Source: Botryllus schlosseri (taxonomy: Eukaryota). From it: a stretch of DNA of 64,000 bases. Each line of letters begins with the position of its first letter. The stretch's first letter is position 1. Under the pieces are notes generated by a model, which was not told where the DNA came from, did not search any database, and saw only the letters and a program-made list of their open reading frames with translations. The DNA lies in assembly GCA_051294905.1 (NCBI GenBank), contig CM119373.1:27900001-27964000 (forward strand), given 5' to 3'. Shown here in pieces: positions 37,795 through 51,607 of this stretch. The translations under genes and the position numbers were made by a program.

Positions 37795-40700
37795 TTAATC
37801 TCCGTTAGTAGAAATGACGCTGTCAATCCACGAGACGTAACTCAAAACTCTGGTGTAGACACCAGGTTTAAGCTTCTGGCCGCACCCTTCTCCCCAGCTT
37901 GTAAGGCCCCAGATTACAAACGGCGATTGCGAATCGGTCCTGTCACGTTGGCACACGAGTGGACCGCCGCTGTCTCCTTGACAAGTGTCCGCAGCGCCCT
38001 GTGCATAAATATGCTATGAGATACACGTTCAGGCGTATACGCCACGGCTGATAATGCAACTTCAAACAAGGTAACCCTGCATACTAAGCACTTAAACCAA
38101 TGTTTGCACGTTGTGTCATTCAGCAAGCTGTACGACCCTGTCCACATAAACATCACCATTTGACACCACGACAAGCGAAAGCATATCAACGATTGGAATG
38201 GGCGTGAAATCGTTATTTGTTACCGGACAGTGTTCAGAGCTCGAATAGCAGATTACGCTATTGTGGACATACCTACTCTCCGACCATGGATATACAATGT
38301 TGTCTAATGTGTCCCCATTTTATGAGTCGTCATGCTAAAGTACCAGTTGATTTTTCAGCTTGATTTCCATGGAGTCGGATGCTCCAATGTCGAGGTTGCA
38401 CTACTAGAAGGGGGATAATCCGGAGAATATCATAAAACTATATTATATTCAGATCTGGATGATTTCTTGGTTCCACCATCTTGGTCATTTCTAGAATTAC
38501 ATTTTTAACCTGCAAATCGTAGTTCATATGACCTTATGACTCGGAACTACGGTTGTAACGACTCGAGTAATTACTCATTGTATATTCACTCAACTTGTAC
38601 TCGAGTCATTGCGCATGACTCGACTGGACTGGAGTCAAAATTATAAAAGTGAAATTGACTTGTGACTCGTAACTAGCGTTGGGACCCCGGGAAATCCCGA
38701 TCCCGGGATCCCGGGATTTGAAGCAATCCCGATCCCGTCGGGATTACTCCCAATGAAATCCCGGGATTTGTAAAGAGCATTTTTCCAAGGCTTACGTAGC
38801 AACATATATCTCTTATTTTGGTAATAAAGCCATGTCACAAACTCTGCTGATTGTCTAAAACAATTCACAATTATTTGATATTAAAGCCAGCTATGGCATA
38901 ACAATGTACTACATCATCACTTCCGTCGTAGTCTACGAATCGTAGCAGTGTAACTGAGTATCGGAAAGTCACAAGGACGGTGCTGTGGAGATGAAATACA
39001 GGTCGAATAATGGCGAATTTCGAAGATGTCAATGCAAAGAGAAAATCACATGTCTAGCGAAACTGTTTGATGTTGTATAAATCTACATAAAAAGCCAAAT
39101 GCAACTTGTGTCAAGACGTTTTGAAAGCTTCAGTGTCTAGCTGGGACTAATACCGCATTTAAGGTCCGTACAAATGATAGTAATTAAATCATGCATGACT
39201 CAATCGGACACGTCAAAGAAAGATCAGCTAAAAATAAAGATGAGGAAGATCGATTCCTATAAAATAAATCGCATAAGCCTCGCCTCGATGAACTTCATAA
39301 CCAGTTAACTGCTGTGGACGGGTTAACATTTATTCAATTATACCCAAAGTGAGTGAATTCGTCGGGCCTTCAAGGCTTATGGCTATGACTTGTCAAGATG
39401 TCGCAAACGGGTTCGTGACTTGGTGATCGAGCACAGCAAATAAATCCGTAAGTGTGTGGAAGAAGATCAGCTTATGGCTATGAAACGCAGCATTGGATGT
39501 TTTTCGATCACGTTTGACGAATCATTTTCTACACGAAACAGGCGGTACATGAATTTAAACACTCATTATCCGGGTGGCCTTCGGTCGCTGGGTTTCATTC
39601 GTATTCACGGGAGCATGTTTTTTCGTCAATACTACAAGGAATAAATGTTGTGTGTGTAGCTTGTATGTGTATTTTACTACTTTGCTAATCCCGGGATTGA
39701 GAAGCGCAAATCCCGGGGAATCCCGATCCCGGGATTTCAAATTTGATCCCGAAGTCCCAACCCTACTCGTAACTTTGTGATTTGGTTACAACTAGGGTTG
39801 CATTTAAAACAAACGGTGTTTTAAAACGCCCTGTTTTAAACATGTTTCAAACAGTGTTTTCAAAAAAGACAGTGTTTTTTTCAAGTTGTAAAATTATGCC
39901 ATAATTGTGTATATACTTTCCAAAAAACATGTTGTATGAGCCTACGGACAATTACCACCCGATAGTGCCGACGTATATCGATATGGGATGATTGGAACCC
40001 TCAAAATAGTCGGTTTAACATTATAAGTACAGATATTTCGTCAAAGGAGCTATATTTTCAATTGTCAATGTCAATGCACTATGACGTCACACTTGAAAAT
40101 TCGTGCCGTCATGACTTATCAAAATAAAATAAAAAAACAAATAAAAATAACATGTTTCAAATAAAGGACTTGTTTTAAACATGATTGTTTTAAATTGATT
40201 TTCGTTTTAAATGCAAACCTAGTTACAACCCCGCTTAGAACTGATTTAAAAGTTCGAAGATGATCTCAAGATCAAAATTAACGCGATGTCCAACACTATA
40301 TTCTGGTTCCATTTGTAATAAAAAAAAAACAGTATCAAACAATTCAGAATGCAGATTGGAACATATAGGTCTATATATATTATAGCTACATTTACCCTAG
40401 CAAATGCGGGACTAAATCTAGCGCCAGAGCTCTACATAGATATCGAAAGTATTATTATGATTAACGATACCGATGCTGCAAATCAAACTCTGTAAAATTT
40501 TGTATTACCGCAGCGCACACCATTCCATCCTGTACGAGGTAACGCCCGTGACGATTTTGTCCATAAATATCACGACACTCCCTCGCAGATTTAAGCTTCA
40601 CTTTTCCCTTCTGCAGAATGTTCGGGTATCTGGTCGCTGCTACAAATTGCAAGTTGCATAACTAGTAAATTCGCTCATGCTGTCGTCCGGGCGAGCGGCA

Positions 40701-49700: not shown

Positions 49701-51607
49701 GGCCCGCGGCATCATAATTAGTTGTCACAAGAATACGGCCCGCCGTTTCTTGTAGAGTTTCAAACTTCAGTGCCAGCACTGTTTAGAATAATTGTGGCAT
49801 TGCTAAGATATAAGTACGTTGTACTACTCTATTGTTACGACATAAAACTGATGCGTAGGCGGAATACTGGTATTATATCATACTAAGTGCAGTGCAATAT
49901 TGTCTGCAGAGTTAACGATAGTTGCCAAGAACAGTGCTCTTCAACCGAGTGCGTACACCCAATAGTGTACCATATATTTTAAAGGGTGTATCATGTGCCA
50001 CTCTACCAGATATCGCATTTCATTCGGCCGATGACTAGCTATCACAACAATGAATTTGCTACAGACTGATATTTCAGAAGGGGTCGACTGGATGTAGAAT
50101 ACGGTATAATGCTCCAAGTGTACGCACTACGCAGCTTGTAAATTACATACTATTAGGCATGTCATTAATGGCTCCACTTGTTTGTAGTATTTGTGTTGTT
50201 TTCCGACTGCAATGTCATTTACACCGGGCCGATATTCCTCATTTTGATTCTGTAGATATGCCGACTTGTAGCACGGCCTACTAATTTAATTACTGAAATT
50301 TTCGAAATTCGTTCTCTACGAAATAAATTCAGGCTATTCAGTACCCCGTTTGCTGTAAAAGTTATAACCATACCCACAGAATTTCAAAATGATCTTATTG
50401 AAATGCAATTCAGTGACGAATTGAAGGAAAAATTCCGTACAAAAAGTACATCCTTGAAAGTGGTCTTTATCCCAGCTTGACCAGCCATGCAAAAGAAACG
50501 AAGAGGAAACTAAGATCGCGCATTTCCGACGCCCATTTAGAAAATGTTCTGGTTCTTGCATCATCTGACTTGGTACCAGATGTAAAAAAAAACTTTCAAA
50601 AAGCAACCAGCATCAAAAGTTTCACATTAATGTATGAGAAGTCCGGCCCGCCTATGACTTGTGCCTTTGATATTTGGCCCGCGACCACCAAAAGGTTGCG
50701 GACCCCTGTTTTAAATGAATGACAGATCATTTCTAAAAATACAATTATTTCTAGAGTAACGCCTAATCCTAACCCTAGCTCAAACAATCAAAGCTATAAT
50801 ATAACCCGTTAAACAACTGAACCCGATCAACTCTTTTCCCCAACCTAAGTTACTTCTTAAAGCGATCTGTCATCAAACGAGCTTCAACTTAATTAAATCT
50901 CAATAATGTCTCGCTACAATAGCTACCATCGTCATTTTCTACTAAAATCAGCATATGATAAAATGAGCTTGGGCCTAACTGAACATTCATTATTTGGCGC
51001 TAAAGTAAGCGTGGCCATCATTCAAAAGCGCTGTAACTTGAGCCGATCGTAATATAACAAAGTGATTACTGTGTTAATTAGTGGTGCATGCTGGAATTAT
51101 ATTTAATTTCAGATTGACGAGAATGCAGTTTGACCGAAATAAATGGAAGCACTCTGTGTGCTCTCACCAGTCTCATCCTGCATAGTAATTTCAAAACCAG
51201 TGGGTTCACGGCTCCCTTCCTCCCGTAGCATGTTGATTCGGAATCGTAAAGTCTAATGACCCCCTTCGACCCCGCGTATCCGTGGCCTTCTATAACAATT
51301 TCATCACCGGCGCGGAGTGGATTATCCAAGCTTAGAACAACGTTTCGTCGACCTGTAATAAGAATATTATAGGTTCCCGCCTTGTCAGTCAAAATCGTCC
51401 ACAGATGCTTCGTGAAAATCACCCCGATATATCCCGTAATTGTAACCATATAAGCTTGTCAGCAATCTGTTTTCCCCTGGATATCAATGAATTATATAGA
51501 GGAATAGTATGCTAGATTCGGGCGACTAGATACAACATTTCCACCTTACCTGATACTATCCCCAGCACGGTCGCAAGTAGCAGCAATACATTCGATGAAA
51601 TCATCAT
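37795..51607 (-). CDS. Secreted trypsin-type (plasminogen-activator-like) serine protease zymogen with an N-terminal galectin-like domain, 467 aa, 12 exons
   Basis: Exons 51550-51607, 51423-51476, 51168-51352, 49392-49500, 47944-48090, 47099-47193, 46315-46430, 43112-43196, 42117-42232, 41072-41175, 40509-40639, 37795-37998. All are GT-AG and phase-compatible, totalling 1404 nt. Signal peptide [20 protein letters not shown]; activation site EECG...RTR|IAGG; triad TAAHC, NDISL, GDSGGP; Asp189 (DTCQ); SWGEGCG, PGVYT. Confidence 0.9.
38674..39765 (+). mobile_element. Ac/hobo-type hAT deletion derivative with BED-finger and catalytic-region relics
   Basis: TIR TAGCGTTGGGAC / GTCCCAACCCTA. Perfect TSD CTCGTAAC. 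ATCCCGGGAT repeats. Decayed frames [11 protein letters not shown]..., LTAVDGLTF..., [22 protein letters not shown]...[11 protein letters not shown]. Confidence 0.92.
39793..40221. mobile_element. hAT MITE with TGTTTTAAAC repeats
   Basis: TIR TAGGGTTGCATTTAAAAC / GTTTTAAATGCAAACCTA. Perfect TSD GTTACAAC (39785-39792, 40222-40229). Confidence 0.92.
41702..42023. mobile_element. Charlie-type MITE (inverted copy of the 20808 family)
   Basis: CAGTGGTTCCCAAC / GTAGGGAACCACTG with GGGGCGA repeats. TSD degenerate. Confidence 0.8.
44483..45690 (-). mobile_element. Second, truncated Chapaev3 copy
   Basis: Starts TTA|CACTGGTCAACACATATTTTTAGGCAGAC and is the reverse complement of about 34150-35434. The other end is missing. 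Confidence 0.8.
47360..47540 (+). repeat. GA-rich low-complexity purine tract
   Basis: Strongly A/G-biased stretch with GAGA runs, in protease intron 5. Confidence 0.8.
48225..48568 (-). mobile_element. tRNA-derived SINE, copy 1
   Basis: Minus strand: CAGACCGACAAGATAGCGTAATGG (A box), GGATTCAATCC (B box), then cttccccgattgacgctaagcattaccgggatagc and aggacaaaaataaa. Homologous to 48794-49140. Confidence 0.8.
48794..49140 (+). mobile_element. tRNA-derived SINE, copy 2
   Basis: CAGACCGGCAAGACAGCGTAATGG, GGGTTCAATCTC, cttccccgcttggcactcagcattaccgggatagc, aggacaaaaataaa and a TTTCC tail. Confidence 0.8.
49643..50708 (+). mobile_element. Charlie/SPIN-type hAT deletion derivative with transposase C-terminal relic
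   Basis: Ends CAAGGATCGGCAACC / GGTTGCGGACCCCTG. Perfect TSD TTTTAAAT. Relic reads [15 protein letters not shown]...[27 protein letters not shown]. Confidence 0.9.

What the first reader, a model, noticed from the sequence alone, without database searches (positions are those of the whole stretch)
37795..51607. Galectin-fold domain fused to a plasminogen-activator-like protease: an unusual architecture
Seen: exons 3-5 encode about 150 aa between the signal peptide and the activation site: [24 protein letters not shown]...GVIRLYD...[19 protein letters not shown]...[27 protein letters not shown]...HSIYRT...[16 protein letters not shown]. Strand spacing and motifs follow a galectin CRD (L..GD.I.I.G; P...G..F.I.I.V..DGY.I; I.GD..I.V), but the galactoside-binding H-x-N-x-R / W-x-x-E-x-R set is mostly replaced and only the Arg residues seem kept. 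The protease has an intact triad, Asp189, and the extra Cys pair (RDCWIL / DGVCA) typical of tPA, uPA, factor XII and HGFA. Established: those enzymes use kringle/EGF/fibronectin modules, and galectins normally have no signal peptide. I know of no described galectin-trypsin fusion. Inference: a recognition-coupled zymogen for immunity, clotting or fertilisation whose lectin fold binds a new ligand.
Basis: partly seen in the sequence, partly recalled or inferred. Interest (0 to 1): 0.85.

Follow-up and report, generated by a model that had tools for sequence, protein, structure and literature searches.

The report
Galectin-fold module on an ascidian protease
An intact 11-exon sea-squirt gene encodes a secreted trypsin-like enzyme of the tPA/HABP2 kind whose usual kringle/EGF modules are replaced by one divergent galectin-shaped domain that has lost the sugar-binding residues; this domain combination occurs across ascidians but is not annotated or described.

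Summary
All quoted peptides lie where stated, and 11 GT-AG exons on the minus strand (51607..37795) give an uninterrupted 449-aa protein. It has a signal peptide, a roughly 147-aa N-terminal domain, a linker with one Cys, an Arg183|Ile184 activation site and a complete S1 protease domain.

The galectin reading is supported for the fold. I could not submit the window's spliced protein, because it has no reference, so I tested homologues. A profile of the N-domain family hits only galectins in the PDB. Pfam Gal-bind_lectin is the only recurring hit and passes its cut-off in two relatives. AlphaFold models of two homologues (pLDDT 89 and 84) match galectins first by Foldseek and by an independent aligner (Z 12.5-16.3, against 11.8 or less for other beta-sandwiches).

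The canonical sugar site is gone, so this is a galectin-like domain, not a canonical galectin.

The protease shares the Cys50-Cys111 pair with HABP2 and neurotrypsin. Full-length 1.7-kb transcripts from other ascidians are colinear with the model, so it is one gene.

Relatives sit in public databases under generic protease names (Styela clava, Phallusia mammillata), and I found no paper on this fusion. I rate it a new variant of a known kind, of moderate interest. The function is untested.

The parts
51550..51607 (-). Coding exon 1: start ATG and hydrophobic signal peptide (aa 1-19); ends in intron phase 1
   Evidence: Homologues all begin with a comparable hydrophobic N-terminus.
51168..51352 (-). 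Exon 2: first part of the galectin-like domain (strands S1, F2, S3, S4 by homology to the model)
   Evidence: embedding nearest galectin clusters, 0.93; finds P0001; strand layout of the homologue model.
49392..49500 (-). Exon 3: middle of the galectin-like domain (S5, S6, F3). It ends inside the F3 strand and lacks the conserved Trp of the galectin 'W exon'.
   Evidence: Exon-type definition from PMC5751359.
47944..48090 (-). Exon 4: last part of the galectin-like domain (F4, F5, S2, F1), the part with detectable sequence similarity to galectins; ends in intron phase 1
   Evidence: HMM alignments to galectin-10/-3 cover this region.
47099..47193 (-). Exon 5: linker with Cys172 (presumed partner of Cys311, chymotrypsin position 122) and the activation site Arg183|Ile184 (R|IAGG)
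46315..46430 (-). Exon 6: protease domain with Cys42, Cys50 ('RDC'), His57 (His231) and Cys58
   Evidence: (Pfam Trypsin, 3.9e-08).
43112..43196 (-). Exon 7: protease domain. The donor at 43112 was chosen over 43106 because the homologues have no insertion here.
42117..42232 (-). Exon 8: Asp102 (Asp287) and Cys111 ('GVC', Cys300)
41072..41175 (-). Exon 9: Cys122 (Cys311, 'PACLP'), Cys136 and the single N-glycosylation sequon (NFT, aa 319)
40509..40639 (-). Exon 10: protease domain with Cys168 and Cys182
37795..37998 (-). Exon 11: Asp189 (Asp386), GDSGGP with Ser195 (Ser392), Cys191/201/220 and the stop codon
   Evidence: (Pfam Trypsin, 2.2e-16).
58038..62599 (-). Tandem paralogue B: four C-terminal protease exons (equivalent to aa 265-449; 40-66% identical to gene A). 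Its 5' part, including any N-domain, lies beyond the window end.
   Evidence: P0009 is closer to B than to A in the last exon (70% against 62%).

Best explanation
This is an intact ascidian gene for a secreted mosaic serine-protease zymogen.

Shown:
- It has a signal peptide, then a single roughly 147-aa galectin-fold domain, then a short linker carrying one Cys and an Arg|Ile-Ala-Gly-Gly activation site.
- It ends in a complete chymotrypsin-fold (S1A) domain with the catalytic triad, Asp189 (trypsin-like Arg/Lys specificity) and the extra Cys50-Cys111 pair that marks the tPA/uPA/FXII/HGFA/HABP2/neurotrypsin group.
- The galectin-like domain has lost the canonical beta-galactoside-binding residues. 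It has no Trp and no His-x-Asn-x-Arg on the S4 strand.

Inferred:
- A trypsin-like activator, or the enzyme itself, cuts after Arg183.
- The galectin-like chain then stays bound to the catalytic chain through Cys172-Cys311 (the Cys1-Cys122 type bridge). It would serve as the targeting or cofactor-binding module that kringle, EGF and fibronectin modules provide in the vertebrate relatives.
- Given the lost sugar site and a strongly basic composition (18 Arg, net charge about +8), the domain would bind a protein partner or a non-canonical, possibly anionic, glycan.
- The module is exactly 147 codons and is flanked by two phase-1 introns, as expected if it was inserted by exon shuffling. Its middle exon ends inside the F3 strand, like F3-type galectin genes.

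The family is ascidian-wide. It has two subfamilies, and this genome carries at least two tandem copies.
For: Gene model: 11 GT-AG exons, 449 aa, no stops. It is colinear with uninterrupted ORFs on 1.7-kb Logan transcript contigs (P0001/L001 and P0009/L003). It also matches a compact genomic copy in a third data set, where galectin-like and protease exons lie within 2.4 kb (L002).

Galectin fold:
- Pfam PF00337 is the only recurring hit in the N-domains. P0100 scores 25.0 bits and P0075 24.3, above the cut-off of 22.1; P0039 scores 19.6, P0001 14.3 and P0010 13.4.
- A profile of the family plus the window's exons finds 106 PDB sequences. All 60 listed are galectins or galectin domains, the best at 8.6e-06.
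- The AF2 model of P0001's N-domain has pLDDT 89.4 and pTM 0.85. The Foldseek top 50 are all galectins, with E about 1e-07 and TM 0.61-0.82.
- AFDB clusters and the ESM Atlas also put galectins on top.
- In VIA-align over 48,161 chains the top 20 are all galectins or galectin-related proteins (Z 12.5-16.3), and the next fold scores 11.8.
- The second subfamily models the same way.
- The embedding of exon 2 alone lies nearest galectin clusters.

Lost sugar site: the window's N-domain has no Trp. In relatives the only Trp residues lie outside the S6 region. The N-terminal-half profile gives 0 PDB hits.

Protease: Pfam Trypsin hits. The triad, Asp189, activation site and Cys positions are present. 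The Cys50/Cys111 and linker-Cys columns are shared with HABP2 and neurotrypsin. The nearest single-domain vertebrate proteases are HABP2 (37-41% identity) and neurotrypsin.

The three-exon CRD and the F3/F4 exon-type definition come from PMC5751359.
Against: - The structure models are of homologues (P0001 is 44% identical to the window in this domain; P0075 is 13%), not of the window's own protein, which could not be submitted because a spliced sequence has no reference.
- The alignments behind the models are shallow (12 and 7 rows).
- The window's own subfamily scores below the Pfam cut-off, and the separate exons give no Pfam hit.
- Sequence similarity to galectins is confined to the C-terminal half of the domain.
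- My mapping of the sugar-binding positions rests on strand assignment, not on a residue-level structural superposition.
- The disulfide tether, the ligand and the activation mode are inferred.
- Expression in this species was not shown.
- The N-domain has three Cys, so one is unpaired or pairs in a way I did not predict.
Confidence: 0.72

Rival explanations
1. The N-domain is a working beta-galactoside lectin, so the protein is a true galectin-protease that recognises LacNAc-type glycans.
For: The fold and the nearest relatives are galectins. Several Arg residues lie on the strands that would form the concave face.
Against: The domain has no Trp, and there is no aromatic residue in the S6 segment. 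S4 carries no His or Asn (sequence). The N-terminal-half profile, where the galectin signature sits, finds no galectin. Among the best structural matches are GRIFIN, GRP and galectin-10/-13/-16, which by my recollection bind lactose poorly or not at all.
Confidence: 0.07
2. The N-domain is only a large pro-peptide (a folding aid or inhibitor) that is released on activation and has no targeting role.
For: It lies directly upstream of the activation site. The canonical ligand site is lost.
Against: The linker Cys is conserved in all 11 family members. It aligns with the pro-peptide Cys of HABP2 and neurotrypsin, and its usual partner Cys122 is present. The domain is 34-47% identical to its three subfamily relatives and keeps the same predicted fold in the second subfamily, at only 12-13% identity.
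Confidence: 0.1
3. The N-domain belongs to another concanavalin-A-like family (laminin G, pentraxin, SPRY/NHR, farnesoic-acid methyltransferase-like, GH16-like), and the galectin resemblance is only generic beta-sandwich similarity.
For: Many such folds score Z 9-12 against the model. The embedding search lists Neuralized, SPRY and Methyltransf_FA at 0.64-0.71.
Against: Sequence profiles, which do not depend on fold, hit only galectins. Galectins fill the first 20 structural ranks, with a clear gap to the next fold.
Confidence: 0.05
4. Gene-model artefact: the galectin-like exons and the protease exons belong to two neighbouring genes.
For: No transcript from this species was available. The introns are long, up to 3 kb.
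Against: All splice sites and phases fit. Full-length colinear transcripts exist in other ascidians, as does a compact genomic copy. The NCBI model for Styela clava has the same layout.
Confidence: 0.02

Closest known systems
HABP2/FSAP, neurotrypsin and the tPA/uPA/FXII/HGFA group of mosaic S1A proteases
   Same: Secreted zymogen, Arg|Ile activation site, pro-peptide Cys with Cys122, catalytic triad, Asp189 and the extra Cys50-Cys111 pair. These are the best single-domain vertebrate matches, at 37-41% identity. The non-catalytic module is bounded by phase-1 introns, which by established knowledge (Patthy's class 1-1 modules) is the rule in this group.
   Different: It has no kringle, EGF, fibronectin or SRCR module. 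Pfam finds only Trypsin, and a single galectin-fold domain takes their place.
Galectin carbohydrate-recognition domains, especially the sugar-site-defective relatives (GRIFIN, GRP/HSPC159, galectin-10/-13/-16)
   Same: The sandwich has the same strand order. It gives the best structural matches (Z up to 16.3, TM up to 0.82). Profile similarity covers F3-F5-S2. The domain is encoded by three exons, with the middle exon ending in F3 (PMC5751359).
   Different: It has a signal peptide, whereas galectins lack one (PMC3396283). It has conserved Cys residues in loops, no Trp and no H-x-N-x-R signature. It is fused to a protease. It falls below the Pfam cut-off in the window's subfamily.
Recognition-coupled protease zymogens (MASPs with lectins, horseshoe-crab factors C and G) - comparison from my own knowledge
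   Same: The concept is the same: a binding module coupled to a trypsin-like zymogen.
   Different: Those systems use CUB/CCP/EGF, C-type-lectin-like or glucanase-like modules, or separate lectin subunits. No homology of the binding module was found, and coupling of recognition to activation is untested here.
Galectin-like domains used for protein binding (Toxoplasma MIC1 GLD, M2AP)
   Same: A galectin-like sandwich without canonical sugar binding, sitting in a secreted protein. Both appear among the structural matches at Z 9.7-10.2.
   Different: The structural match is much weaker than to true galectins. They come from an unrelated lineage and have no protease domain.

Membership tests
Galectin (Pfam PF00337 / canonical CRD) | Beta-sandwich of about 135 aa with the S1-F2-S3-S4-S5-S6-F3-F4-F5-S2-F1 strand order | tested here: met
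   AF2 models of two family homologues (pLDDT 89.4 and 83.6). Galectins are the top matches by Foldseek and by VIA-align (Z 12.5-16.3). The window's own protein was not modelled.
Galectin (Pfam PF00337 / canonical CRD) | Sequence-profile membership (score at or above the Pfam gathering cut-off of 22.1 bits) | tested here: inconclusive
   P0100 (25.0) and P0075 (24.3) pass. P0039 (19.6), P0001 (14.3) and P0010 (13.4) do not, and P0009 and P0062 give no hit. The window's exons tested singly give no hit. A family profile hits only galectins in the PDB at E down to 8.6e-06.
Galectin (Pfam PF00337 / canonical CRD) | Sugar-binding signature H-x-N-x-R (S4), N (S5), W-x-x-E-x-R (S6) | tested here: not met
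   The window's N-domain has no Trp, and none lies in the S6 region of any relative. S4 reads [10 protein letters not shown], without His or Asn. The N-terminal-half profile finds no PDB galectin. The residue mapping is by strand assignment.
Galectin (Pfam PF00337 / canonical CRD) | No signal peptide; cytosolic synthesis and non-classical secretion | tested here: not met
   A hydrophobic N-terminal leader is present in the window protein and in all 10 relatives. The rule for galectins is from PMC3396283. No dedicated signal-peptide predictor was available.
Galectin (Pfam PF00337 / canonical CRD) | Beta-galactoside binding | not testable with these tools
   Needs a glycan array or lactose-affinity assay with the recombinant domain.
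S1A (chymotrypsin-fold) serine protease, active | His57-Asp102-Ser195 triad, Asp189, oxyanion GDSGGP and an Arg|Ile-x-Gly-Gly zymogen activation site | tested here: met
   His231, Asp287, Ser392, Asp386 and Arg183|Ile184. Pfam Trypsin hits on the exons, and on full-length P0001 at 2e-55.
tPA/uPA/FXII/HGFA/HABP2/neurotrypsin subgroup | Extra Cys50-Cys111 disulfide pair and a pro-peptide Cys bridging to Cys122 | tested here: met
   The Cys224/Cys300 and Cys172/Cys311 columns are shared with HABP2 and neurotrypsin and are absent from TMPRSS9 and an amphioxus protease. tPA, uPA, FXII and HGFA themselves were not in the alignment; their membership of this group is from my own knowledge.
tPA/uPA/FXII/HGFA/HABP2/neurotrypsin subgroup | Kringle, EGF, fibronectin or SRCR modules upstream of the protease | tested here: not met
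   Pfam finds only Trypsin in P0001, and only PF00089 is precomputed for all family members.

The most novel reading that the evidence does not exclude
The basic, sugar-site-less galectin-fold domain is a sensor for an anionic polymer or foreign surface, such as sulfated tunic glycans, microbial polysaccharide or nucleic acid. Binding would trigger auto-activation of the zymogen. Ascidians would then have built their own recognition-coupled initiator protease, analogous to factor XII/FSAP contact activation or the lectin-MASP system, from a galectin gene by exon shuffling. The tandem paralogues would form a small cascade.
Probability: 0.12. Interest if true: 0.8.

Novelty: new variant of a known kind. 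Interest (0 to 1): 0.55.

Why it matters
Vertebrate clotting and fibrinolysis proteases were assembled by shuffling a small set of modules onto one protease scaffold. This gene shows the sister group of vertebrates placing a different module, a galectin fold, on the same tPA/HABP2-type scaffold. The module is bounded by phase-1 introns, as shuffled modules are. It is also a clear case of a galectin fold moved into the classical secretory pathway and stripped of its sugar site, which bears on how lectin folds are reused for other ligands. In practice, about ten database proteins now labelled 'chymotrypsinogen-like' or 'plasma kallikrein' could be re-annotated. The family also offers a tractable test, in Ciona-type model ascidians, of what a non-lectin galectin domain binds.

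Tried and rejected
1. Pfam on the three N-domain exons singly gave no hits; they are too short.
2. phmmer of exon 2 against the PDB gave only spurious papain-family matches at E > 0.1.
3. My first idea was that the '[11 protein letters not shown]' stretch marks a farnesoic-acid-methyltransferase-like (PF12248) domain. It is not supported: that family appears only at rank 78 (0.67) in the embedding search and never in the Pfam or fold searches.
4. A word-indexed search limited to the N-domain of P0001 found only P0001 itself. Full-length and profile queries were needed.
5. A profile of the N-terminal half alone (S1-S6) against the PDB gave 0 hits. I therefore could not get a residue-level HMM alignment of the sugar-site strands and mapped them by strand assignment instead.
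6. The window's own spliced protein could not be submitted for structure prediction or whole-protein searches, because it has no reference. I did not type it in, and I used the closest homologue plus the window's exons as alignment rows.
7. Six literature searches for a galectin-protease fusion or an ascidian counterpart found nothing relevant. The only paper found that mentions the tunicate modular protease TRAMP does not describe its modules.
8. An alternative donor for exon 7 (43106) was rejected because the homologues show no two-residue insertion there.

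
Full report
**The sequence.** Reading the three minus-strand frames around them gave 11 exons, each with an AG acceptor and a GT donor. Joined, they form a 1350-nt ORF of 449 aa without internal stops. 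The protein has these parts:
- a hydrophobic leader (aa 1-19);
- a domain of about 147 aa encoded by exons 2-4 (exactly 441 nt);
- a linker with one Cys (Cys172) and the activation site Arg183|Ile184 (R|IAGG);
- a trypsin-type domain with His231, Asp287, Ser392, Asp386 (position 189) and eleven Cys.

The introns before exon 2 and after exon 4 are both phase 1. Pfam recognises Trypsin in the protease exons but finds nothing in the three N-domain exons taken singly.

**Is it one gene?** A second copy of the last four protease exons lies upstream at 62599-58038 on the same strand. This is a tandem paralogue cut by the window end. A search of 1.84 billion representative proteins with exon 2 alone found P0001, a 451-aa protein. 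It is encoded as an uninterrupted ORF on a 1765-nt Logan contig, which is most simply a transcript. Further searches added nine more members:
- P0009 (453 aa, on a 1702-nt contig from a neighbouring run accession);
- P0010 (Styela clava XP_039273620, named 'chymotrypsinogen 2-like' or 'A-like');
- P0039 (Phallusia mammillata CAB3244092, named 'plasma kallikrein');
- six unnamed relatives.

The window model aligns end to end with P0001 (51% identity), P0009 (49%) and P0010 (37%). A 5.2-kb genomic contig from a third data set carries the same exon order within 2.4 kb. The two-gene artefact is therefore excluded.

**What is the N-terminal domain?** The window's spliced protein has no reference and could not be submitted, so I worked with homologues and put the window's exons in as alignment rows.
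- Embedding. The language-model embedding of exon 2 alone has galectin clusters as 76 of its 100 nearest neighbours, with a top score of 0.93.
- Pfam. On the N-domains of seven relatives the only recurring family is Gal-bind_lectin. It passes the gathering score in P0100 (25.0 bits) and P0075 (24.3 bits) and falls below it in P0039, P0001 and P0010.
- PDB profile. A profile of the family matches 106 PDB sequences. All 60 listed are galectins or galectin domains, the best being the porcine adenovirus fibre galectin domain at 8.6e-06 and galectin-10 at 1.2e-04. The aligned part is the C-terminal half of the domain (F3-F4-F5-S2).
- Structure. AlphaFold2 models P0001's domain with pLDDT 89.4 and pTM 0.85 as an all-beta protein whose strand order fits a galectin. 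The Foldseek top 50 PDB matches are all galectins (E about 1e-07, TM 0.61-0.82). AlphaFold-DB clusters and the ESM Atlas agree.
- Independent aligner. A Foldseek-independent scan of 48,161 chains puts galectins or galectin-related proteins in ranks 1-20 (Z 12.5-16.3). The next fold, a beta-fructosidase sandwich, scores 11.8.
- Second subfamily. The P0075 model (pLDDT 83.6) behaves the same way.

I conclude that the domain is homologous to galectin CRDs, or at the least is a galectin-type sandwich.

**It is not a canonical galectin.**
- It has a signal peptide, which galectins lack (PMC3396283).
- The window's domain contains no Trp. The only Trp residues in relatives lie in the F2 or S2 regions, not in S6.
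- The strand that should carry H-x-N-x-R reads [10 protein letters not shown].
- The segment that should carry W-x-x-E-x-R contains no aromatic residue.
- A profile of the N-terminal half, where the galectin signature sits, finds nothing in the PDB.
- Two loop Cys (Cys61 and Cys93) are conserved in the window's subfamily. This fits a secreted, oxidised protein.
- The domain is strongly basic, with 18 Arg and a net charge of about +8.

Among the best structural matches are GRIFIN, GRP and galectin-10/-13/-16, which by my recollection bind lactose poorly or not at all.

**Gene structure.** The domain is encoded by three exons, as galectin CRDs are. The middle exon ends inside the F3 strand, which is how F3-type galectin genes are defined (PMC5751359). 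That middle exon is short and lacks the Trp that gives the 'W exon' its name. I offer this only as a hint of descent from a galectin gene. The 1-1 intron phases fit insertion by exon shuffling, following the known rule for modules of the clotting and fibrinolysis proteases (my own knowledge).

**The protease.** I aligned the window with HABP2, neurotrypsin, TMPRSS9 and an amphioxus protease. The Cys of 'RDC' (position 50) and of 'GVC' (position 111) fall in columns shared by HABP2, neurotrypsin and all ascidian family members shown, but not by the other two. The linker Cys aligns with their pro-peptide Cys, and Cys122 is present. By identity the nearest single-domain vertebrate proteases are HABP2 (37-41%) and neurotrypsin.

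**Mechanism.**
- Shown: the protein is a secreted zymogen with an intact active site, trypsin-like S1 pocket and Arg|Ile activation site, and its N-domain has a galectin fold without the canonical site.
- Inferred: cleavage after Arg183 yields a two-chain enzyme held together by Cys172-Cys311. The galectin-like chain would direct the enzyme to a partner, either a protein or a non-canonical and possibly anionic glycan. This is the role that kringle, EGF and fibronectin modules play in the vertebrate relatives.

Within the window's subfamily the domain is 34-47% identical to its relatives, against 44-59% for the protease domain. The fold persists in the second subfamily at only 12-13% identity. 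This argues for a retained function.

**Novelty.** Members of the family are already in public databases under generic protease names, with only PF00089 precomputed. None of six literature searches found a galectin-protease fusion. I could not query InterPro architectures, so 'not catalogued' is unproven. I rate this a new variant of a known kind, namely a mosaic S1 protease with a new module. It is of moderate interest to people working on protease module evolution, galectins and tunicate immunity.

Noticed in passing
window 58038-62599, minus strand: Tandem paralogue B of the protease. Four C-terminal exons are 40-66% identical to gene A. Its 5' half, including any galectin-like domain and the activation site, lies beyond the window end. 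The last exon is closer to transcript P0009 (70%) than gene A is (62%), so the duplication probably predates the split from that species.
   Followed up: partly
P0009 (locus L003:67-1428), activation-site region: This paralogue-B-like transcript from another ascidian keeps His, Asp and Ser. It has ...S-M-L-G-E-D-L-G where the others have R-I-x-G-G, so it lacks a normal Arg|Ile activation site. It may be a non-activatable or differently activated family member.
   Followed up: no
L002:2598-5009: A compact genomic copy of the same gene in a third data set (SRR23343704). The galectin-like and protease exons are separated by introns of roughly 100-700 bp, against 1-3 kb in this window.
   Followed up: partly
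window 51550/51352 and 47944/47193 (introns 1 and 4): The galectin-like module is exactly 147 codons and is bounded by two phase-1 introns (a class 1-1 module), the signature of exon-shuffled modules in vertebrate clotting and fibrinolysis proteases.
   Followed up: partly
relatives P0039, P0075, P0100, P0128-P0130 (alignment): The second subfamily has a longer linker with an extra Cys. Most members (not P0062) also have a C-terminal extension of about 30 aa with a conserved Cys ('YCQ/YCH'), suggesting an additional disulfide that the window's subfamily lacks.
   Followed up: no
window 22220-22840 and 15613-16050, minus strand: Two long ORFs (206 and 145 aa) rich in Asn, Ser and Asp. The first ends in a hydrophobic stretch. 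They are possibly exons of unrelated genes and were not examined.
   Followed up: no
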